Shown here piece after piece: positions 7,574-64,000 of a stretch of DNA of 64,000 nt. The first letter of the stretch is position 1. Every line of letters begins with the position of its first letter. Source of the stretch: Octopus sinensis (Eukaryota); contig NC_043004.1 in NCBI RefSeq assembly GCF_006345805.1, positions 69,750,001 through 69,814,000 of the forward strand. The letters run 5' to 3'. The notes beneath the pieces were generated by a model, which did no database searches, was not told the origin of the DNA, and saw only the letters and a program-made list of their open reading frames with translations. Made by a program: the position numbers and the translations under genes.

Positions 7574-8469
7574 GTCTGGGGAGAGTCATTCTCTTTTAGT
7601 GCCTTGTTATTTAACACACCCACAGGTAATGTTTCCACTCATTTACTTATTTATTTTTCTAAAATATTCATTACGTCTTGCAACCTTTTCAATAGTCGTT
7701 GACTCTGTTATCCGAGCTGCGCAGTGAGTGTGTTAAATAATATGACACTAAAAGAGAATAACTCTCCCCACACTCAACAAAATATGCTTCAATACACAAA
7801 CTCACATAGAGTATCTTGCAAACCAAATCCAAAACGAAATATAGGAGAAAATACTTGCCAAGAGTGCCACACAAGAGCTTCCTACTATAGCTCCAGGCCA
7901 ACAAAAAGCCTTGTGAGTGGATGTGGTAGATGGAATCAGAAAGAAACTGTGTATATGTGTGTGTGTGTGTGTGTATATATATACACACACACATACACAG
8001 TTTCTTTCTGCTTCCATCTACCACATCCACTCACAAGGCTTTTTGTTGGCCGGGAGCTATAGTAGGAAGCTCTTGTGTGGCACTCTTGGCAAGTATTTTC
8101 TACTATAGCCTTGAGTTGATCAAAACCTAGAGAGAAGATTTGGTGGATGCTAATTGAAAGGATCACATCCTCTGTATGTATGTGTGTGTATTATTATTAT
8201 TATTATTATTAAAACCACAAAGTACCTTGTGAAATACACCTACCCAGGGTCTCCTGGCCAAAATATTAATTCATTTCACTATTTATCAAGCTGTTAAAAA
8301 CATATTACTATAATGATATCTTTACTCTCTTAACAGATGAAGTGCTATACTGCTTGTTGAAAATTTTACCACAGTGTGTGTGTGTGGTGTGTGTGTGTGT
8401 GTGTGTTGCCTCTTATAAACAAATTCCTGCGTTATTTCACTCTAACACATTGTCTTTATTTCATTCCAG

Positions 8470-23810: not shown

Positions 23811-24694
23811 GCTGGAGGGTGGTAGCGAACAAAACAAGATATTTATTTATTTCACTGTTTATATTGTATTACATAACTGGAAGCATTGATTGTGTATCTG
23901 TGGAGTACTCAGCCACTTAGAGGTTAACTCAAGAAGCAGTTGATCAAATAACTGAACCCTGATCATTGAAACTGAAGGTGGTCTATATTTTCTCTTTTAC
24001 TTCTTTTAACCATTGGACTGTGCCCATGCTGGAACACTGCCTTGATAGTTTTAGTCAAACTAATCAACTCTAGCACTCTCTTTTTTCCAAGGCTGGTACT
24101 TATTCTATCAGTCTTTTTTTGCATGGATGTCAACAAACCAACACTGGTTGTCAGGCAGTGTGGGGTCACACACATGTTATTTCACTTAGAGATAGCAACA
24201 CTATATATCTTTTATCTTTTACTTGTTTCAGTCATTAGTACTTGGTGTATTTAGCTCATAATCCTATGGTCAGAAGTTCAATTCCTGATGGAATGAAGCA
24301 AAGCACTTTCGTTCGCATTGTTCCAGTTCACTCATCTGGAAAAATTTAGTTTTTAGTTTGTATTTCAGTGAACCAGCCCTGTCACATTCAGCGTATCGTG
24401 CTGAATCACCCTGAGACCTACTTTAAGGGTACATGTGTCTGTGGAGTGCTCAGCCACTTGCATGTTAACTTCATGAACAGGCTGATCGGATCAGCTGGGA
24501 CCCTTGTCATCATAACTGACAGAGTACCCAGCCGTAACTGAATCAAGAAAATCTGCTGTCTTTTAATGTTAGAAAATTGTTTATTTGTTTCAAAATAAAT
24601 AACAACTACTTGTATAGAAAATTTCATGGAAATAATGTTTCCAGTTGATTATACCAATTTGGACAACATCAGCATTATATATAAATCTATATAT

Positions 24695-26380: not shown

Positions 26381-28305
26381 GCTAGATAAACAGGTACCAC
26401 ACACACACACGCTCTCTCTCTCTCTTGCATGCACAATTTACATGTTGACAGTTTAAGTTATATGTCTCCTGTAGTCCGCTAACTAAACGGATCATTAGGG
26501 TTTTTTATGTTATACTTACATAATCAGCTAATTGCTGCTGATGTCAGAGTGACAGAGAATCAGAGAGAGAGATGACAGACATAGACACTACCAATCTTAT
26601 CAGTAGATATACACACACACACACACATATATAACTTGCCAAATTTACTGCCATTTTACTAAATGTTGATTGTATTGAAAATTTATTAAACATTGGTGGC
26701 ATAAAAGGCGCCCATGCCAGCGACATATAAAAGGCACCCAATATACTGTAAGGTGGTTGGCATTAGGAAGGGCATCCAACCATAAAAACCATGCTAAAAC
26801 AAACAACTGGAGCATGGTGCAACTCTGTGGCTTGCCAGTTCCAGTCGAACCAATCTCATGGAGAATGGACGTTAAATGATACTGATCATTAGCAGTTCAC
26901 GCATGAGAGATGCACACAGCATAACTGAATATTGAAGATGTTCACTTTGCAATCCTGAGGTCCCAAGTTCATTGCCACTGCATGGCACCTTAGACAAGTG
27001 TATTCAGTTTTAATCATAGCCTCAAGTTAATCCAACCAAGCATTGTGAGTGAAGTTGGTTAGATGGGAAATTGTGCAGAAACCTCTCGACTGGATTGTCC
27101 CTGTGATTTAAAGGCACAGCCATTCCATGCACATTGGTTGTGTATCTGTGGAGTACTCAGCCACTTAGAGGTTAACTCAAGGAGCAGTTGATCAACTGAA
27201 CCCTGATCATTGAAACTGAAGGTGGTCTATATTTTCTCTTTTACTTCTTTTAACCATTGGACTGTGCCCATGCTGGAACACTGCCTTGATAGTTTTAGTC
27301 AAACTAATCAACTCTAGCACTCTTTTTTTCCAAGGCTGGTACTTATTCTATCAGTCTTTTTTTGCATGGATGTCAACAAACCAACACTGGTTGTCAGGCA
27401 ATGTGGGGTCACACACATGTTATTTCACTTAGAGATAGCAACACTATATATCTTTTATCTTTTACTTGTTTCAGTCATAAGACTGAGGCCATGCTGGGGC
27501 ACCACCTTGAAGCATTTTTAGTCAAATGAATTGAATCCAGCACTTTTATTTTTTTAAGCCTGATACCTATTCTGTCAATCTCTTTTGCCAAATCACTAAG
27601 TTACAAGGGACGTGAACACATCAACACTGGTTGCCAAGCAGTGGTGGGTGACAAGCACAGACACACACACACATCAGGCTTCTTTGAGGTGCTAAAAAGT
27701 TCTTGGTTTTAAGGATATAGCAAAAGGTCTGAGTTCTTTTTTCAGGGCTTAGAAAAACTGAAAGGCTGCTGCAATAAGTGTGTGAATCAGTGAGGGGGAG
27801 GAATATGTTGAATGAAATCATAATTAACTGATCCTCCTGTATTTTCTTTCACCCAAAGACAGGAACTTTTCAGCACCCCCTCATACCAGATTTAGAGAGA
27901 AAAAATATATAGTACTGGGGTCAATTTGTTTAACTAAACCCTTCAAATCAGGGTCTCAGAAAGGTTGTATGGTCTACTGACTGAAACAAGTAAAAAATAA
28001 AATTGCATAATTTGCAGAAATTTCAGAAACAAAACTTCGCCGGGAGTTTACTTTCAACCAAGATGAGGACTCATTAATCAACCAACCTTGCTAATCATTT
28101 CATTGTATTTTGTATCTAATCTCTTCTTTTAATATCTTTTGCCTGCCACAAACGAGGAGACCTTCTTGCATGTTCGTTTGCAAACTGTACTTTTTTTCTT
28201 TACCATCCCTGCTCTGTATACCATCATGATCATATTTCTCTCTTTATTTAATTTGCTCTCTTATAGATGTCTATTTACTGCTTGATGTAGAAATGTGCTT
28301 TGGAA

Positions 28306-33644: not shown

Positions 33645-33785
33645 TTATTTGGTGGTTCTTCTGGATGGTTCGGATGCTGTTGGAGGTGGAGGAACTCCTT
33701 TGCGGTCCAAATCATCAATGTAGGATAAAAGAATCTTTTTGCGGTCCTCTGCGATGCAATCTAACACCAAATATCGACGATCATT
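33645..33785 (-). CDS. TCERG1: TCERG1 last coding exon NDRRYLVLDCIAEDRKKILLSYIDDLDRKGVPPPPTASEPSRRTTK*
   Basis: Matches the CA150 C-terminus (GPPPPPTASEPTRRSTK); ttacag acceptor; TAA at 33647-33645. Confidence 0.97.
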   Translation of the reverse strand, partial: NDRRYLVLDCIAEDRKKILLSYIDDLDRKGVPPPPTASEPSRRTTK

Positions 33786-33906: not shown

Positions 33907-33967
33907 CTGTAAAATTGTTTCTATATCTTTTAAATGTATTTCATTTTCTTCTATCATCTTTTTTGAT
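33907..33967 (-). CDS. TCERG1: TCERG1 exon (R)SKKMIEENEIHLKDIETILQ (FF6)
   Basis: cttcag acceptor, cag|gtaaga donor, 61 nt; phases join correctly. Confidence 0.94.
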
Positions 33968-35817
33968 CTGAAGAAAAGAAGGTTAAAAGTTTTCTTTTAA
34001 TGCAACATCTATGTCTTGCAACTTAGATCAATAAAATAAGTAACAGGCTTGAAGAATAAGTAGAGATAATATTATTGACTAAATGATTTCAAGGTGGTGC
34101 CCCAGCATGACTGCAGTCTAACACAGTTTGAAAACATTGCTTGTTTGTAGAATTATGGTTTCACGAGGTAGCCATGTCAGAAACATTTCCCCATCGTACT
34201 TTTAACCTCTCATCACCTGGCACAATTACAACTCCCTCAATACTGTACCCCTTGTTCTCAGTTGAAGCATCTTGTCTTGTGAGTTAGTACCACATAAAAA
34301 AGCACCCAGTATTCTCTGAAGTGGTTGGCACTAGGAAGAGCATTCAGCTATAGAAACTATGCCAAAGCAGTCATCGGACTCAAGTCTTTGTCAAACTATC
34401 CAGCTCATGCCAGTATGGAAAGTGATCATCATCATTGTCTTTATGTTAGTTTTTCCATGCTGGCAAATCTTGAAGCAAAATGTCTGAAGCTGGATAGTCT
34501 TCCTGTCACAAACCCTTAACTGTTTTCCAAGTAAAGTACATTCATTCAACTGATCCTCACACATCAAAAGCAATGAAGCTACTGAAATTACTGGAAAATG
34601 TAAGCATAGATACCATTTTATTAAAGAGATCAGCACAAGGTGTGCTGACTTGTGAACCTCCATAACTCAGAAAGGTTATGCCAGAAGAGCAGAAGCTTCC
34701 AAAAGGACCTTCCGTATTGGCCAGATCAAAGGATAAAAACCAAGCTATGGACCACCTCTTCCCAAGGATAAAAATGGGTTTGCATAGGATCAACACCCTA
34801 ACATGTAACAGAGAATCAATGACAATTCAAAACCAACAAGATCTGAGAGAGGAAAGCCTTCTCTCAGCTCCAGCCCAGAGTTGAGAATAGGAGGGAAAAG
34901 TTGCTGATGACATATGCTTTGTTATTATTATTAAGGCAGAATCGTTAGCATACTGGATGAAATGCTTAGTGGTATTTCGTCAATTGCTACATTCTGAGTT
35001 CAAATTCTGCCACAGTCAACTTATGCTTTCCCGGTTGATAAATTTAAGTACTAGTCAAGTACTGGGGTCAATGTGAATGACTTTCCTCTCCCACCAAATT
35101 TCAGGCCTTGTGCCTATAGTACAAAGGATTATTATGTCATCCTCCAACAAAACCAATAAGTCAACTTACTGTGTTCTGTCAGAAAATGGATATCAGAGTT
35201 CCTTAGACCACGTCTCATGCCAGAGGCATAATCTTAGAAAATTTCCAACTTTTCATTAAACAGAAACCTGACACACAGTAAATTGAAGATAATTTGTTTC
35301 AGTCTTTTGTAATTAGCTCAGTTTCAGGCTTTTTGACTTATTTTGTATAGTCAGAGGTGGGAAGTTTTTTGTCATTAGTATTAAAGAGAGCAGTTTTATC
35401 ATTAGTGACAAATAGGACTGGTTGAGATGACATTCTCACACACACACTCAAGACTCTCTCTCAGTTTCTGTTTATGAATCCCACGCACAAAGCATTGGAT
35501 ACCCCAAGGTTAGGATAGAAAGGCACATGCTTATGGTGTTGTGTGCTTGCAAAACAAACTTCATAACCATACACTCATATCTGTACCTTAATTATAGTTT
35601 GAAAAAACTTTAAGCATAAAAACATAAGCTGCCTACAATTAAATTCTATTTTCTTCTCATGAAAGGCATATCTTACACAGCTTTTCAACAGGCTGAATGA
35701 ATGCTGCCTACTTTTCATCTTCAGCATTTACAACCTCAAAGTTACTCTATGTACTTCCAACCATTCTTAAAATTTCAGAACATCCAATAGTCTAAAATGA
35801 GTTGTGTATTTACATAC

Positions 35818-35918
35818 CTGTATGTCACCAGTTTAGTCTCTTTTAACAATTCCCGGAAATCTGCTTTAGCTTGAGCAATTTGTTCATAGCGATAATCTTC
35901 AAATTCTTTTTCTCTTTT
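35818..35918 (-). CDS. TCERG1: TCERG1 exon KREKEFEDYRYEQIAQAKADFRELLKETKLVTY(R) (end of FF5, start of FF6)
   Basis: cttttcag acceptor, ag|gtatgt donor, 101 nt; AKADFR.LLKETK conserved. Confidence 0.96.
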
Positions 35919-36981
35919 CTGAAAAGAAAAAAAAAAAAAAAATGATGTATGTGAAAATAGAAAAGTAAAACAATTTTAAAACAACAAAAACTATTTTGTA
36001 GTATCTATAACATAATGATTGAAAAAGTGCAGGACTGTGTCCCCCCCCCCCCCATTCATGTTATTAAAACAAGTTATATTACTTCGAAGAAATTATAAAT
36101 GGGTATTAAAAAATTTTTAAATATAAATTATAATGCTCAATATTACAAGATTCACTTCTGTTTTAAATGTCAACTTCCGTTTGAATTTCATGTCAACAAA
36201 GTTTTTTCTTTGCATTCATAAAAAAATGTAATAAGGCGAAAGAAAAGAACGGGTAAATTATTTTTAATCATATTACAAAATACAACAATCCCTATCTATC
36301 ACAGTTTTCAAACTGTGTTAGACTGCAGTCATGCTGGGGCACCACCTTGAAATCATTTAGTCAATAATATTATCTCTACTTATTCTTCAAGCCTGTTACT
36401 TATTTTATTGATCTAAGTTGCAAGACATAGATGTTGGCATTATCAAGAGCATTAAGAAAAGAAGATATAAAAACATTAACCCCGATAAATACAAAGGGTC
36501 CATTTGCTGACAATTGTGTCCACAAAGAAGAAACATTCATTACTCTCTTTTAATTGAAATGTATTTAAGTTTCTTTTTAATTGCTAGGAAAGGGACACTA
36601 GAAACACTTAAGAAGTCTATAAGTGAATATAGCAAAACTCAACTCTTCATATTGGTAAACGTAATTCATTAATTCTCACCAGAGAATCTATTTTCAAATT
36701 CACTCAAGTGAAGATTCAGGAACATTTTCTCTTGACAGTCTCAACACTTTTCCAATTTTCATTATCGTCTTTTTAAAATGTATCATGGATTATTTTACTG
36801 ATTACAGAATAAACTATAACAGAGTCTTTGTTCAATTCATGTGCATATTGTCAATTTACTTTATAATTTATATATCATATCTATATGTATACGTAATATC
36901 AATATGCAAAATACAGAAAAGTTTTGAGAATAATACTAAAGAAAATCATAAAAATTATGTGAAATGTTTGCCATTACTTAC

Positions 36982-37065
36982 CCTGTCACTAGATGAAAAC
37001 TTGGAATATCTAGGATCATCTTTGATCATTTTCTTCACATCTTTCCAAGAAGAGGTCAATGTAAT
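36982..37065 (-). CDS. TCERG1: TCERG1 exon ITLTSSWKDVKKMIKDDPRYSKFSSSDR (FF5)
   Basis: ctccttag acceptor, agg|gtaagt donor, 84 nt. Confidence 0.96.
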
Positions 37066-46497: not shown

Positions 46498-47160
46498 GCG
46501 TGTGTATCTATATGTGTGTTCTGTCCTCCCATCAGTGCTTGACAACAACTGTTGGTTTGTTTATGTCCCCATAACTTAGCAGTTCGACAAGAGACCAAAC
46601 AAAAAGTACTAGGCTCAAGAAAAAGTCCCGGGGGTGGTTTGTTCAACTAAAACCCTCCAAAGTGGTGTTCTAGCATGGCTGCAGTCAGATGACTGAAACA
46701 AGTTAAAGAATAACGGAATAAAAGAATAATTACAGCTGTGGTTGTTTCTTCGTGGTACAGTTGCTTTATACCATGGATTGTAGAACGGACAGAAAAAGCA
46801 ATGGAACTCATTCATGTTTTGAGTGAGGTAAACAAATCGAAATTATAATTGAAGTTGTAATGTATAACAATCACATAACTCCAAATTATGTAACCACAAT
46901 TACTATTAATTACAGGTGAAGCACACCTGACCCAAAATCTACATTTAGTTAATAATTATTCACTAGAGAAAAATTTAAAAAATTTTTTAAATCCTTCTCT
47001 GTTCAAATCAATGCCTGATATTCAGATTAGTCCCACTGTTTATAGCTGACACTGCAAAGCTGTAAACAGAGACACACAGACAGACAGACACTACCTGCCA
47101 ATTAAAATGAGCAACTCAAGTAATGAAAGATATAGTAAAATATATAGGAACTCCTGTAAT

Positions 47161-47334
47161 TATGTGTGTGTGTATATCACACACACACACACATCTACAT
47201 ACATATGTATGTACGTACATATATATACTTTTATATATTTATGTATATATACACACACACGTACATATGTATACACACATGTACATACATATATATATAT
47301 ATATATATCTACACACACACATATATATATATCT

Positions 47335-47392
<58 letters not shown>

Positions 47393-47440
47393 ACATTATA
47401 CACACACACACACACACACACGTGTACATATATACATACA
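47161..47440. repeat. Compound (CA)n/(TA)n/(TG)n microsatellite
   Basis: Direct reading. Confidence 0.9.
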
Positions 47441-47442
47441 TA

Positions 47443-47666
47443 TGAAGGGGTGCTGAAAAATTCCTGGCTTTCAGGGTATTGCAAAAGACCTGGTTAGAAG
47501 TTCAACCTTTAAAATTTCTTTTACAGGGCTTAGAAAAACTGAAGAACTATTGCACCAAGAGTGTGAGTCTGAGAGGGGAATATGTTGAACAAAATCATTA
47601 ATCAACAGACCCTACTGCACTTTTTTTTTTTGTACACAAAGCTAAAAACTTTTCAGCACCCTCTCA
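47443..47666 (+). mobile_element. Mariner-derived MITE; second copy at 27685-27883
   Basis: GGGGTGCTGAAAA / TTTTCAGCACCC TIRs, TA flanks, residual GLEKL..RGEYVE transposase end. Confidence 0.75.
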
Positions 47667-49742: not shown

Positions 49743-51109
49743 CTAATCTTTAACTTCAATTTCTACAAAGACAGCTTTCTTTTCTGTGGAAAGGTGGTTT
49801 CCATAAAGCTTCGGAATTAGTTATGCTGTTGGATAAATAAAACTATTTATCTACACTTTTCTTTCATTCAATGTTGTTGTTTTTATTTTTAAGGACACTT
49901 AAAGATATTGTGCGTGTCAGGGTTTCTGACAGAGTCCCTATTGCTTTCATTTGAAAAATATTCATTTGAAAAATATTCAGGTCTTCCTGCAAGCCGTGTG
50001 TGTATGTGTTTCATATTGACAAAGAAAGCCCTAAGAAACTAAGGTAAGTTTAACTAACATGACATTAACAGAGAAAACACAAAGAAACTGATAACACAAT
50101 TTTACAGAATATCTAAGGCTACCCAGGAAGTACTTTAAAGAACCTTAATAATATCGGCTAACATTTGTAGAAAAATTAATTGACTTTGATATTTCGATAT
50201 TCATTTATTCTTTTGCTATTTAAAAAGGAGCAGGAGATTGTAGTTACACGCGTACCAACTTTAAAGTTACCTATTTCTAACAATATCGATGTAGGGAGAA
50301 AATAACAAAAACAAAAAATTTTTTTTAATTTGGCAATATACAAATTACACCAAAAATATGAAGATTTCAATATCAAAAGAAAAGGAGAGTTTTTCATTTT
50401 TTTTTTTCCCCTTTTCTTTTCTTTTGATTAAAATCCAAGTGAAGGCCAAAATATTTCTGAAAAACAAAAATGATTACAGTATTGGCAGCTCTCAGCTTTA
50501 CTCAGCTGTCTCTGGCCTGTGCTTTGGTTGAAGTTTTAATTGTAGAAGAAATAATAATAATAATAATATTCAATGAGATTCAAAGATTTCTACAGTTATA
50601 GACAAAAAGAAGCATTTTCTATTGTGGGTAATTTTGAAATTACTATTGTTTTCTCAACAGCTATGAGTTTAGTTTTTGTATGTATATATATTGTGTGAAA
50701 TAGTCTTGATGCCAACATATGTTAAGTTTATATGTACTTTTTCTTATTCAATAAATGAAAGTTTTAAATAAAACAAGGTAATACTTTGCATATTATCAGA
50801 TGAATATGATCAAATTCAATATTATCAAAAGTAGTTGATTTTGTTTTTACTCTCTTTATCAATTTGAAATTTTACAACTTGCTCATTTGTACTTAATTTG
50901 ATTGTCATTACAAACCGTAAAGATTGGAATGCAATTTTACGGTTGTTCTTATTGCAAATGTATGCTAATAACAAGTACAAAATAATTTTTAATCATTTTC
51001 GTTATATAAAATTACTCTTCAATGAGTTATATGTAGAAATAAATAAAATGCAATTTAATTGAATTTCTTTTATGTAAAAAAAAAAAACGTTTTCAATTAT
51101 CCTAGCCCA

Positions 51110-51592
51110 AATGCATATATATGTACACATGTATGTGTATATATATATATATACATACATACACATATATAAACATACATACATGTGTAAAAATATACAC
51201 ATATATACATTAACACACACACAAACTTGTATACATATGCATATACATACACATATATACACACAAATATAGACATACAAACATATATATATACATAGAC
51301 TTCTGCATACATAACTACATGCATAACATCTACACACATACACATATGTACATAAATATATGCACATACATAAGCAAATATGCACACACATATGCATACG
51401 TACACATATACACAGACACAGATATATATACACACATACCTACATATGTAAATACATACATATACATATGTATATACATATATGTACATATATGCATATG
51501 TACATACATACATTATACATATACATGCATACATGCATGCATACATACATACATACATACATGTATGTATATTTGCATGCATGTATATATGT
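51110..51592. repeat. Degenerate (CATA/TA/CA)n microsatellite
   Basis: Direct reading. Confidence 0.9.
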
Positions 51593-54500
51593 GTATTAAA
51601 GTATTGATATTTTTCACTGTTTGAATGTAAAGTATATTGGCATTACTGCAAAACAGCTATTATTCATGAAATTAATAATCACATTACAAGCTCACCATAC
51701 GTTGAATGATTAGGAATTAAAGATTTAAATGGTCAAAATATTTCAATCATTACTACTAGCTACAAATAATTATGTGAAACATATAAACAAACATACTGGA
51801 ACATGATACAGTAGCTAAAACAATACATGTGGAACTTGTCACTTGCAAAGTACAAAAGTTAAATGGTGAATGCCCACACAAACACCATAAAAATACTGCA
51901 CAAACTGGATAGATATAAATGTCTATCTTAAAACATATACACATAAGTTTGTAAGGATGATATTTAACAGATTAATAATTTCAAAAAATACACATGGGAT
52001 GGAGAAATGGATAAAATCAATTGAAATAACATATCTGTTCTCCATGAACTTGGTTTTAAGCAAATGAAAACAATGTTGAGATATAATATATCGAAATGAA
52101 TGTTGTATTAAAGAAATACCTCTAGATAGATAGATAGATAGATATGTCTAACAGGCTGCTTTGAATCAATTTTCTTCCCATAACAAAATTATCAATTTGT
52201 CTCTTGCAAATTTTACAACTTATAATTATTAAAATAAAGTACAAATAAGTGAAAGTCCGAGTCCATTTCTAACTGAGCAGTTTGTAAAACAAATATGTAT
52301 TTATAAAATCGTTTACACTATGGGTAAACCAATTTCTCTTTTAGACTTAATCCTTCCTTGTTAGTTAATTTTAAAAACATCCTATCTGATTTATGACTGG
52401 AGACCAAACGAAAATGAAAGAACCTTTTTTTTTTTGTCATAACAAAATTTTTTTTCAATTTCATTATGAAGAAATTAAAAAAATAAATTCAAGATTTTAG
52501 TCAGAGCCTGTAATCTGAAAGTGTTGTTTCTGTGTACATGAATGCCAATGCATAGATAGACAAACACACATGCATGCAGCACAGGATAAGTGGTCTTTCT
52601 GCTCATCAAACTCACAAGCCTGACAAACCTTTCCGTTTAAGTGGTTCATAAAAACACTAACAATGCTGACATATTGATATCCCAATTAAAAATATTATGG
52701 TTTGAACAAAAATCAAGTCCATGGAGATAAGATATGAATGTATAGAACATTTTAGAAGTAAACAACCAGCACATGAATCTCTTGAGAAATACAAGGCCAA
52801 TATTGGTTTCACAAGAATCACTCGTTTTTATCTGCAAGTGACTCTAGACTGCTGGTGGCATAAAGAGTGGAAACATTCACACACCAACATACTAAGATTT
52901 ATAAGTAATCTCACACAATGAACCAAGTTTACTAATTTTAATATGTAAACTTCAACTTAATATGACAGGGTCATTCCATACACAAAAAGAAAAGTAACAA
53001 AAAAAAAAAGTCACTATCAATATGTTTAATAATTATTTAGTTAACTACAAAGTTTTAGATATTCAAAGAGATTACAGAACTGAAGGCTACAAAACATACT
53101 AAAACATAATGTTATTTTAGCAAGATTGTATTAATTTAAAATAATTGTCAATGTTAATAAAAGATGTTAACTGAGAACAATAGAAATTGCCGTTTAGTGC
53201 CAACTGAATATTTTAAGTTAAATATCTTTGTAACATCAACTGATATTAGTTTGGTTTTGTCAGTTTTAATATGAGCCACAAGGAATAATTATGCAAAATA
53301 TTAAAATTGCACATAATATAAATTCAATTGTAAAAGAAAATGGGCTCGTTAGCTTTGATTTATTGTTTTGATTTTTTACTTAAATTTGATTATAAATAAG
53401 TTGCAGAAGTTTCTATTAAAAGTGAAATTACAAGTGAAAAATGTAAACTACAGCTAAAAGTAGTTCTAAAAATTAAACATGGCAAAATTACTTACATGCA
53501 GATGGAATATCATTCAAAAAAGATTCTAAAAGTTGACACGACTAATACATTATTATCATATGCAAATATTTTAAACTAACAACTATTAAGAAATTATAGA
53601 AATATAAGGCATTAAATTTAACATTTAATATTAACTTTTAATAAAAACTTAACTAAATATCTATATATTTATGTGGAACCTTTTTAAAAAAAAAAGATTA
53701 AAAAATGAAAATTACAAAATTTTCTAACAGTTATTATTGTTATTATTATTATGACATGGAATGGAATGACCCCAATTAGATTATCATGTAAAAACCCTAA
53801 CAAAGTTCATTCAAACAAAAGATACAGAAGAAACAAATACCAGTCACTGATATAGCCTATTGGCTATGTATGCGCCAGAGCAATTCGTCTGGAATGGCTG
53901 ACGAAATATCCATAACTCAATGCAACTGAGACTGCACATCGACAAATTCAACCTCGGGCCTTACTTGACTGTAACTGCAAGGCTTTCTTTTGAAAGGGAC
54001 ATAAAATTATTCATCAGAAAAATATTGAAACTCAAACACTTTTTAAATAGTTAGAACATCATAAAAATTGGGTTGACTTGCAGTTCACCAGCCTCTTGTG
54101 TTAAATACAACATCACAGATAGAACAGCTGCTCTAACAAGTTTTAAACCTATTCTAGATACATATATATATATACATATGAGAGTTACAACTATGAAGAT
54201 TACTAACTAATAAAATACACTTAAATTATTTAGATGGAAACTGATAATAATTATTACTTTCTTATTTAAAGTTCATTATAATGATATTTTTAAAATTGTT
54301 CATTTATTTACAGTTCCTCAATAAAGCTAATTATAAAATTATGCTTAATATAAACATTTACTTAGAATTTAATAAACTTATTTTAAAAAATTAAGGAAAT
54401 GAATTATCATAGATACTATATTTTATCTCATTTAACAGTTAACAGAAATAACTAAAAACCTAGTAAAAATTCATTTTAAATATTAAAAGTATGTGATGTA

Positions 54501-57056: not shown

Positions 57057-57508
57057 CTAAACAAAAGAAAAGAATCACCTGTCTCAAATCAGCTCAAATG
57101 AATTCTGTCTCTGGGGCAAAGAAGTCATCATCATCATCATTTAATGTCCATTTACCATTCTGGCACAGGTTGGGCGTTTTGACAGGAGCTGGCCAGCTGC
57201 AGAGCTGGCCAGATTCCAATTGTCTGTTTTGGCATAGCTTCTATGGCTTGATGCCCTTCCTAATGCCAACCACTTCACACAGTGTGCTGGGTGCTTTTTA
57301 CGTGCCACTGGCATGAGAACGTTTTACATGACACCAGCACAAGTTCATTTTGCATGGCACTGGCACCTGCAAAACAAAGACCTCTCAAGTGGGAGAGCGA
57401 GTGGGGCATGGCTATAAAGGACATGCCTATATGTAGGGATGGCCACAATTTTTACTTTTTACTTAAAATCAAAATCGATCAACATCAATGGAAATTGAAG
57501 CTGTGATA

Positions 57509-57873
57509 CCAGTGCCGGTGGTATGTAAGAGAACCATCCGAACGTGGCCTTTGCCAGCGCCGACACGACTGGCCTCCGTGCCGGTGGCACGTAAAAAGCA
57601 CCATCTGATCATGACCGTTGCCAGCCTCACTTGGCCCCCGTGCTGGTGGTACGTAAAAAGCACCATCCGATCGTGTCCGTTTGCCAGCCTCATGTGGCAC
57701 ATAAAAAGCACCCACTACACTCACGGAGTGGTTGGCATTAGGAAGGGCATCCAGCCATAGAAACATTGCCAGATTAGACTGGGCCTGGTGCAGCGTTCTG
57801 GCTTCCCAGACGCCAGTTGAACCATTCAACCCATGCTAGCATGGAAAGCAGACGCTAAACGATGATGATGATG
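57509..57873 (+). repeat. Same minisatellite-bearing retroposon (4-5 units) with a (GAT)n tail
   Basis: Same unit and 3' block as 8805-9077. Confidence 0.75.
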
Positions 57874-58333
57874 AATCTTCTTAACTGCAGCAAATTGCCA
57901 TGAGTCCCAGTCTCTTGTCGTCTCAGTGAGGAACAGCATCTGAAGATCCTTTCTCACCACTTCATCCCGCATTTTCCTGGGTTTACCTCTTCCATTTGCA
58001 GTAAGAGATCAGCACTTCTGTAAGCGGCTGTCCTTACTCATATGCATCACATGGCCATGCCAGTGCAGTCTTCTCTCTCTTGTACACGCTCAATGCCTCT
58101 TATACTATTTTCCTCTTAAGTCATTTACACTCTGTGATACATGCACACTGACATTACCCATCCAGCAGAGTATGCTGGATGGGTAAGGCTTTACAAGTTC
58201 TCTGTAGTCATAGCCCATGCTTCACTGCCATGTAGCATAGCTGTACATACACAAGCATCATACAATTTGCCTTTCACTCTGAGAGAGAAGCCCTTAGTTA
58301 TCAACAAAGGTAACTGCCTGAACTTTGCCCAGC
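57874..58333 (-). mobile_element. RTE-clade LINE ORF2 3' remnant
   Basis: Minus strand reads KGKLYDACV..AMLHGSE.W ... RRLHW.GHV ... RGKPRK with stops. Confidence 0.8.
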
Positions 58334-63747: not shown

Positions 63748-64000
63748 CTAAAAAAAGCCATTTATTTTCTCTTCTATAATATCAATGAACACAACAGTAA
63801 TACAAGACACATCATAACTGTAGGGACAAAACAAAAAGAATAATGCTAAAGTATTTCAGTACAAAATCTAAAACTGAGTTACCTCTCTCACCATTTCAAG
63901 TCCAACTATGCAGGAATGCACAACACCAAGTGAACAAAGGTAGCTAGTATCAGACCGACACCAAGTCCAATTTGCCTATGATCTACAGATTGACAAAAAC

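What the first reader, a model, noticed from the sequence alone, without database searches (positions are those of the whole stretch)
34003..36436. Perfect 133-nt inverted repeat enclosing a single TCERG1 exon
Seen: 34003-34135 and 36304-36436 are 133/133 reverse-complement identical by manual comparison, although the SINE-derived part is diverged from other copies. One arm ends about 35 nt from the acceptor at 33968. Pairing loops out the 101-nt exon 35818-35918. Skipping would read DR-IKKDDRRK*, with the stop only 34 nt before the last junction (predicted to escape the 50-nt NMD rule) and FF6 lost. Inference: a recent duplication or gene-conversion-maintained stem creating a truncated isoform, circRNA or editing substrate in a splicing regulator.
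Basis: partly seen in the sequence, partly recalled or inferred. Interest (0 to 1): 0.7.

Follow-up and report, generated by a model that had tools for sequence, protein, structure and literature searches.

The report
Perfect inverted repeat around TCERG1 exon
Two identical 133-base copies of an old repeat fragment lie in opposite orientation in the introns on either side of one conserved exon of a TCERG1-like splicing-regulator gene. This is a young, local example of the well-known inverted-repeat-pair arrangement, and its effect on splicing or RNA editing cannot be tested from sequence alone.

Summary
Positions 34003-34135 and 36304-36436 are 133/133 reverse-complementary, or 139 nt with one 1-nt indel. 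The borders are sharp and the flanks are unrelated. It is the best repeat in the 64-kb window.

The arms are a fragment of a 386-nt SINE-like family that is abundant in the window. They are only 70% identical to its consensus and 64-73% to other copies. Their identity therefore comes from a secondary copy event. Two other short, sharp-edged, 97-98% identical local duplications lie in the same window, so this looks like a general local copying process and not something specific to TCERG1.

In the pre-mRNA the arms form a 133-bp duplex (-236 kcal/mol). That is a textbook substrate for ADAR hyper-editing and a geometry that can favour back-splicing or exon skipping. None of this is testable here. 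Exon B has strong splice sites and is conserved in distant relatives that lack any such repeat.

Verdict: a real, young member of a known kind, with function unproven. No close relative of the source species could be reached.

The parts
36304..36436 (-). Upstream arm (in transcript order) of the perfect inverted repeat. It lies in intron A-B, 545 nt after the exon A donor and 385 nt before the exon B acceptor. It is a fragment (model positions ~9-150) of a 386-nt SINE-like family.
34003..34135 (-). Downstream arm of the perfect inverted repeat. It lies in intron B-C, 1682 nt after the exon B donor and 35 nt before the exon C acceptor. It is the same repeat fragment in the opposite orientation.
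33998..34002 (.). 5-nt extension of the pairing (TAATG), matching 36437-36442 (GCATTA) across a 1-nt indel. It is either part of the original duplicated segment or a junction microhomology.
34136..36303 (-). 2168-nt loop between the arms. It contains exon B and other unrelated repeat fragments.
35818..35918 (-). Exon B, 101 nt (KREKEFEDYRYEQIAQAKADFRELLKETKLVTY + 2 nt). It encodes the last helix of FF5 and the first helix of FF6. It is conserved as a separate exon in distant relatives.
36982..37065 (-). Exon A, 84 nt, phase 0 at both ends (ITLTSSWKDVKKMIKDDPRYSKFSSSDR). Donor AGG|GTAAGT.
33907..33967 (-). Exon C, 61 nt (SKKMIEENEIHLKDIETILQ). It contains the frameshift stop used if exon B is skipped.
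33645..33785 (-). Coding part of the last exon D (NDRRYLVLD...SRRTTK, stop included). Intron C-D is only 121 nt.
33968..34002 (-). 35-nt end of intron B-C between the arm and exon C. It holds the pyrimidine tract and a likely branch site (CUUUUAAC, A about 19 nt upstream of the AG). The helix begins immediately upstream of it.
   Evidence: sequence; the branch-site assignment is inference

Best explanation
A ~139-bp fragment of an old, diverged SINE-like repeat was recently copied in inverted orientation about 2.2 kb away within the same gene. The likely route is a local replication or repair template switch or a templated insertion, not transposition. One copy now sits in each of the two introns that flank constitutive exon B of a TCERG1-like gene. 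No substitution has occurred since. The upper 95% bound on divergence between the copies is about 2%, so the event may even be polymorphic. Both copies are transcribed in one pre-mRNA and can form a perfect 133-bp intramolecular duplex that loops out exon B and ends 35 nt from the acceptor of exon C. The most probable molecular consequence is intronic A-to-I hyper-editing by ADAR. That would melt the duplex. At most, low-level by-products would result: a 101-nt exon B circle, or skipping of B, C or B+C. The arrangement is best read as a neutral or slightly deleterious young structural variant, not an evolved regulatory device. Shown: the anatomy, the repeat origin, the in-silico duplex and the reading-frame outcomes. 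Inferred: the copy mechanism, the age, editing and the splicing effects.
For: The pair is a perfect 133-nt IR, or 139 nt with one indel, with sharp borders. Both arms match the same segment (positions 19-128 by HMM, ~9-150 by eye) of a family with at least 10 full copies in the window. The arms are 70.5% identical to the consensus and 64-73% to the other copies. Independent copies share a median of 72%. No other copy in the window has the arm's borders. No target-site duplication is visible at either arm on reading the flanks printed. The same window holds two more young, short, sharp-edged local duplications. One is a 355-bp direct copy whose breakpoints cut through repeat and unique sequence, which proves segmental copying and not transposition. 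The other is a 125-nt-arm palindrome at 97%. In the minimum-free-energy fold of the 3.27-kb pre-mRNA segment, 132 of 133 in-register arm pairs form, and the duplex alone is -236 kcal/mol. Exons A-D and their boundaries are conserved in three distant lophotrochozoan loci that have no flanking inverted repeat and none of this repeat family. The stem is therefore lineage-specific and not part of ancestral TCERG1 regulation. Splice sites of exons A-C are near consensus. Literature: neighbouring inverted repeats are the main ADAR hyper-editing substrate across Metazoa, and long near-perfect dsRNA loci are exceptionally frequent in octopus (PMC5625713). ADAR antagonises circRNA formation (PMC5042038). 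Octopus circRNAs are overall low (PMC9699675).
Against: No transcript, read or population data could be consulted, so dsRNA formation, editing and neutrality are all inferred. Which arm is the parent could not be established: the apparent continuation of the family end at the 36304 side is not significant (p=0.11-0.48). No sister-species locus was reachable, so 'recent' rests only on zero divergence, which continuing gene conversion would also produce. The source organism was not identified with the tools. Co-transcriptional removal of intron A-B before the downstream arm is made could prevent the duplex from forming at all.
Confidence: 0.6

Rival explanations
1. One reading: the stem is an operating regulatory element that produces a C-terminally truncated TCERG1 (skip of exon B), a circRNA, or an editing-controlled switch in a splicing regulator.
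For: The geometry is right for looping out exon B, and the duplex is extremely stable. The skip product terminates 34 nt before the last junction. An inverted Alu pair close to an exon shifts it from constitutive to alternative in minigenes (PMC2533698). Reverse-complementary intronic sequences promote circularisation (PMC5042038).
Against: The stem is absent from distant orthologues and shows no sign of age or of constraint beyond its identity. Two similar young duplications lie nearby in non-equivalent places. Exon B has strong splice sites. A 101-nt single-exon circle is short for efficient back-splicing (my own knowledge). ADAR activity counteracts such stems (PMC5042038, PMC9699675). The truncated protein would lack part of FF5 and all of FF6 with no evident benefit.
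Confidence: 0.1
2. Two old, independently inserted copies of the repeat in opposite orientation have been homogenised, and are kept identical, by gene conversion.
For: Both arms belong to an old, diverged family. Perfect identity with a 1-nt indel just outside the identical tract could mark the edge of a conversion tract.
Against: Independent insertions would not share both end points, and here both arms cover the same model segment. No residual diverged homology exists beyond either border. At 133 bp the tract is at the low end of the homology needed for efficient recombination in the systems where this was measured (my own knowledge).
Confidence: 0.12
3. The 133-139-nt unit is itself a young mobile subfamily that inserted twice, by chance, on either side of exon B.
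For: The identical ends of the two copies are what a defined element would give.
Against: No target-site duplications or terminal features are visible at either copy on reading the flanks printed. No third copy or near-copy lies in 64 kb. Exact 22-mer scans of public metagenome and prokaryote genome collections were empty, though those collections are not expected to hold this genome. Two hits within 2.2 kb would be a coincidence.
Confidence: 0.08
4. Assembly artefact: one arm was introduced by a chimeric or fold-back read or by a polishing error.
For: Perfect identity of short inverted segments is a pattern that mis-polishing could create. Reads were not available.
Against: Both arms are embedded in unique, non-N sequence with intact, conserved exons in the right order and strand between and around them. 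Fold-back artefacts normally give kilobase palindromes without a unique 2.2-kb spacer (my own knowledge). Similar but slightly diverged duplications nearby argue for a biological process.
Confidence: 0.07

Closest known systems
Inverted intronic Alu pairs (IRAlus / reverse complementary matches) flanking exons in primates
   Same: Two copies of one SINE-type repeat sit in opposite orientation in the introns on either side of an exon. They are predicted to pair in the pre-mRNA. Such pairs are known to be ADAR hyper-editing substrates and to favour back-splicing (PMC5625713, PMC5042038).
   Different: Alu pairs arise from independent insertions and are typically 10-20% diverged and ~300 nt long. 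Here the arms are a 133-nt fragment, identical to each other but ~30% diverged from their family, so they arose by a secondary local copy. No editing or circRNA data exist for this locus.
RABL5 intron 2 inverted Alu pair (Lev-Maor et al. 2008, PMC2533698)
   Same: One arm lies very close to an acceptor (24 nt there, 35 nt here). Pairing was shown by editing and shifted an exon from constitutive to alternative, and the effect was lost when the arm was moved more than ~68 nt away.
   Different: In RABL5 both Alus are in the same intron upstream of the affected exon. Here the arms lie in two different introns and enclose an exon. By analogy the exon most at risk may be exon C, not exon B.
Mouse Sry circular RNA with long flanking inverted repeats
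   Same: Near-perfect inverted repeats flank a single exon, and base pairing drives circularisation (cited in PMC5042038).
   Different: The Sry repeats are tens of kilobases long and the circularised exon is over 1 kb. Here the arms are 133 nt and the exon is 101 nt inside a constitutively spliced, multi-exon gene.
Short local segmental (template-switch type) duplications
   Same: Sharp borders unrelated to element ends, no target-site duplication, copy within a few kb of the source, and either orientation. A direct 355-bp example and a 125-nt palindrome lie in the same window.
   Different: The mechanism is inferred from anatomy only. Junction microhomology is at most the 5-nt TAATG, and it is interrupted by a 1-nt indel.

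Membership tests
TCERG1 / CA150 orthologue (host gene) | TCERG1-type WW domain | tested here: met
   PF23517 WW_TCERG1 scores 70.7 bits against a cut-off of 70, on the exon at ~61.4 kb
TCERG1 / CA150 orthologue (host gene) | Array of six FF domains ending at the C-terminus | tested here: met
   PF01846 FF, 6 stretches, 229 bits. Best database relatives are named transcription elongation regulator 1.
TCERG1 / CA150 orthologue (host gene) | N-terminal WW1/WW2 and Q/A-rich region | not testable with these tools
   The 5' exons lie beyond position 64000 of the window
Exon-flanking intronic inverted-repeat pair (IRAlu-like) | Two copies of one repeat family, opposite orientation, in introns on both sides of an exon of one transcription unit | tested here: met
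Exon-flanking intronic inverted-repeat pair (IRAlu-like) | Arms predicted to pair with each other in preference to other partners | tested here: met
   132 of 133 in-register pairs in the MFE fold of 3.27 kb, duplex -236 kcal/mol. Other inverted partners in the gene are 76% identical or less.
Exon-flanking intronic inverted-repeat pair (IRAlu-like) | dsRNA formed in vivo (clustered A-to-G mismatches in RNA reads) | not testable with these tools
   No RNA-seq of the source species was reachable
circRNA-producing locus | Back-splice junction reads (35818 donor joined to 35918 acceptor) | not testable with these tools
   No transcript data; no close relative in the protein or contig collections
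SINE (repeat family that the arms derive from) | Short interspersed multi-copy element | tested here: met
   At least 10 full-length (~386 nt) and many partial copies in 64 kb
SINE (repeat family that the arms derive from) | Pol III (tRNA/5S/7SL-derived) head | tested here: inconclusive
   ARAGORN finds no tRNA-like gene in the window. Rfam gives no match on a full copy at E<=10. B-box-like motifs seen by eye only.
SINE (repeat family that the arms derive from) | Target-site duplications and a defined tail | tested here: inconclusive
   No clear TSDs at nine full copies. One end is followed by A-rich / TAAAAG-like sequence.
DNA transposon with the arms as terminal inverted repeats | Target-site duplication outside the arms and a non-host interior | tested here: not met
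   No direct repeat is visible outside the arms on reading the flanks. The interior carries a host exon whose position is conserved in distant species.
Hairpin-RNA / pre-miRNA locus | Short loop and a match to a known RNA family | tested here: not met
   The loop is 2168 nt. The only Rfam hit is RT-6 at 25 bits against a gathering score of 46.7, E=0.054, i.e. chance.

The most novel reading that the evidence does not exclude
The perfect stem is kept identical by selection or conversion and works as an ADAR- or temperature-sensitive switch. When unedited, it loops out exon B (or occludes the exon C acceptor) and makes a TCERG1 lacking FF5-FF6 or a 101-nt circle. A splicing and elongation regulator would then tune its own isoforms through RNA editing in an editing-rich lineage.
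Probability: 0.04. Interest if true: 0.6.

Novelty: new member of a known kind. Interest (0 to 1): 0.22.

Why it matters
If the stem forms in vivo, it is a clean natural test case for how a perfect 133-bp intronic duplex competes with constitutive splicing and with ADAR. The arms are identical, there is a single small exon in the loop, and one arm lies 35 nt from an acceptor. It also adds to evidence, within one 64-kb window, that this genome makes short local direct and inverted duplications. That process could explain why some genomes are unusually rich in long near-perfect dsRNA loci. As a single locus with no expression data, it is otherwise an ordinary instance of a common arrangement.

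Tried and rejected
(1) Close relatives. Three protein searches, exact-ORF look-ups and a metagenome locus scan gave nothing closer than ~80% protein identity, so presence or absence in sister species could not be tested. The searches seemed to return only proteins up to ~1.75x the query length, so full-length orthologues may have been missed.

(2) Exact 22-mer of the arm in metagenome and prokaryote genome collections: no hits. This is uninformative, because those collections are not expected to contain this genome.

(3) Which arm is the parent. The inner flank at 36290-36303 looked like a continuation of the family end, but this is not significant (p=0.11-0.48). Rejected as evidence.

(4) An older, longer inverted repeat around the arms. 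An apparent 25-nt inner-flank similarity is not significant (p=0.43-0.80). Rejected.

(5) nhmmer extensions of the repeat beyond the outer arm border run into conserved exon C and are spurious.

(6) tRNA origin and orientation of the repeat family. ARAGORN and Rfam were negative and the TSD search was inconclusive. I therefore call it 'SINE-like' only.

(7) Transposon-with-TIRs reading. Rejected, because the interior holds a conserved host exon.

(8) Organism identity. A literature search for a repeat-core string was empty. My recollection that the repeat and base composition resemble octopod genomes is a lead, not a result.

Full report
OBSERVATION. The repeat finder reports arms 34003-34135 and 36304-36436 as 133 nt, 100% complementary, 2168 nt apart. 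A direct string comparison confirms identity. BLAST extends the match to 33998-34135 vs 36442-36304, 139 columns with a single 1-nt gap. It is the highest-identity repeat pair in the window. Within the gene, the next-best inverted pairs are 76% over 222 nt and 74% over 196 nt. The sequences immediately outside both borders are not significantly similar. Inner flanks give p=0.43-0.80. Outer flanks give p=0.02-0.11, for an out-of-register low-complexity match. The repeat therefore has sharp edges.

GENE CONTEXT. The minus strand carries the 3' two-thirds of a TCERG1-like gene. Stop-to-stop translations show a WW exon at ~61.4 kb and FF-domain exons down to a stop at 33645-33647. Pfam gives WW_TCERG1 (70.7 bits, cut-off 70) and six FF stretches. 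The nearest database proteins are 'transcription elongation regulator 1' of gastropods, bivalves and annelids at 70-79% identity.

The four last exons are:
- A, 37065-36982 (84 nt)
- B, 35918-35818 (101 nt)
- C, 33967-33907 (61 nt)
- D, 33785 to the stop

All have AG/GT borders and near-consensus signals. Introns are 1063, 1850 and 121 nt.

The upstream arm lies 545 nt after the exon A donor and 385 nt before exon B. The downstream arm lies 1682 nt after exon B and 35 nt before exon C.

Skipping B reads ...SSSDR|IKKDDRRK*, with the stop 34 nt before the C/D junction. Two additions:
- Exon B also encodes the last helix of FF5, so FF5 is damaged as well as FF6 lost.
- Skipping C alone gives ...TYRMIVDIWC*, while skipping B+C removes 162 nt and stays in frame.

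WHAT THE ARMS ARE. nhmmer with the arm contexts finds about a dozen related copies in the window. I aligned nine good copies and built a 386-position profile. Both arms match positions 19-128 (44 bits each), and by eye the similarity runs from about 9 to 150.

The family is abundant, with at least 10 full-length and many partial copies. It seems to consist of two modules that also occur separately.

I could not show a tRNA-derived head. ARAGORN found none, Rfam found none on a full copy, and target-site duplications were not evident. I therefore call it SINE-like.

The arms are 70.5% identical to the consensus, against 75-88% for other copies. They are 64-73% identical to individual copies, and independent copies share a median of 72%. 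Two independent insertions of such an old family cannot be 100% identical, so a secondary event made them so.

ORIGIN. Both arms cover the same segment of the family, and nothing beyond either border is homologous. On reading the flanks printed, I see no target-site duplication at either arm. No third copy with these borders exists in the window. This fits a single copy event of a ~139-bp fragment better than conversion between independent insertions or two hits of a mobile unit.

I could not tell which arm is the parent. An apparent continuation of the family end on the 36304 side is not significant.

The window offers precedent:
- A 355-bp direct duplication (23884-24238 vs 27132-27481, ~98%) has breakpoints that cut through unique sequence and 21 nt into a repeat copy that is complete only at the 27-kb site. 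It is thus a segmental copy, not a transposition.
- A palindrome with 125-nt arms, 97% complementary and an 18-nt spacer lies at 7840-8107.

Three short, sharp-edged, young local duplications in 64 kb point to a general local copying process.

With zero substitutions in 133 bp, the 95% upper bound on divergence between the arms is about 2.3% (inference). The event is young and may be polymorphic.

RNA. Folding the 3266-nt pre-mRNA segment from exon A to exon D gives 132 of 133 in-register arm-arm pairs in the minimum-free-energy structure. The duplex alone is -236 kcal/mol, or -241 with the 5-nt extension. The 35 nt between the helix and exon C hold the pyrimidine tract and a likely branch site about 19 nt upstream of the AG (sequence; the assignment is inference).

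COMPARISON ACROSS SPECIES. No close relative was reachable. Three distant lophotrochozoan genomic loci (L002-L004) have the same A/B/C/D exon structure, with introns of 0.3-1.2 kb. They carry no copy of the repeat family and no inverted repeat flanking exon B. Exon B is thus an ancient constitutive exon, and the stem is lineage-specific.

MECHANISM AND KNOWN RELATIVES. Neighbouring inverted repeats in one pre-mRNA are the main substrate for ADAR hyper-editing in all Metazoa. The octopus genome has an exceptionally high fraction of loci that can form long, nearly perfect dsRNA, 4.4e-3 (PMC5625713).

Reverse-complementary intronic sequences promote exon circularisation, and ADAR counteracts it (PMC5042038). 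In octopus, circRNAs are overall low (PMC9699675).

An inverted Alu pair 24 nt upstream of RABL5 exon 3 pairs, is edited, and makes that exon alternative. The effect vanishes when the distance exceeds ~68 nt (PMC2533698). By that precedent the exon most at risk here may be exon C.

Three points weigh against a strong effect on exon B:
- Its splice sites are strong.
- A 101-nt single-exon circle is short (my own knowledge).
- Intron A-B may be removed before the downstream arm, 2.2 kb later, is transcribed (inference).

Its validity in this lineage is unknown (my own knowledge).

The source organism was not identified by any tool. My impression that the repeat family and ~36% G+C resemble octopods is a recollection only.

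VERDICT. It is a young local inverted duplication of a repeat fragment. It creates a textbook exon-flanking dsRNA stem in a TCERG1-like gene, and so is a new member of a known kind. Functional consequences are plausible in kind but unproven, and on present evidence more likely minor: intronic editing and trace by-products. Interest is low to moderate.

Noticed in passing
window 7840-7964 / 7983-8107: Near-perfect palindrome: 125-nt arms, 97% complementary, only 18 nt apart. It is built from the other module (profile positions ~195-311) of the same repeat family. It lies ~26 kb downstream of the TCERG1 stop.
   Followed up: partly
window 23884-24238 and 27132-27481: Direct 355-bp duplication, ~98% identical (2 substitutions, 2 small indels), 3.2 kb apart, with sharp borders. 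The 23.9-kb copy ends 21 nt into a repeat that is complete only at 27460-27863. The 27-kb site is therefore the parent, and this is a segmental copy, not a transposition.
   Followed up: partly
window 33907-33967 and 35818-35918: Exons B (101 nt) and C (61 nt) together are 162 nt. Joint skipping would keep the frame and delete 54 residues (FF5 helix 3 to FF6 helix 2). Skipping C alone gives ...TYRMIVDIWC*.
   Followed up: yes
window 47150-47500 and 51000-51650: Long compound (TG/CA)n-(TA)n microsatellite blocks inside TCERG1 introns. They give self-inverted BLAST matches and long spurious ORFs rich in C/M/Y/V.
   Followed up: no
window 57119-57308 / 57694-57882: Another inverted pair (196 nt, 74% identical, 386 nt apart), from a second repeat family (the one also seen at 34290-34400). 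It lies just upstream of the exon at ~57.05 kb.
   Followed up: no
window 36250-36322 (-): Weak Rfam hit to RT-6 RNA (25 bits against a gathering score of 46.7, E=0.054), overlapping the inner edge of the upstream arm. Judged a chance match.
   Followed up: partly
window ~36043-36056 and 35921-35936: A homopolymer C run of about 13 in intron A-B, and a T16 tract (on the transcript strand) forming the pyrimidine tract of exon B. Both are places where assembly length errors are common.
   Followed up: no
L003 / L004 (GCA_022702875.1, GCA_022702835.1) and L002 (ENA ERZ25084522): Unannotated genomic contigs of distant lophotrochozoans carry the TCERG1 3' exons with the same exon boundaries but introns of only ~0.3-1.2 kb. 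They are useful as outgroups for intron-position conservation.
   Followed up: partly
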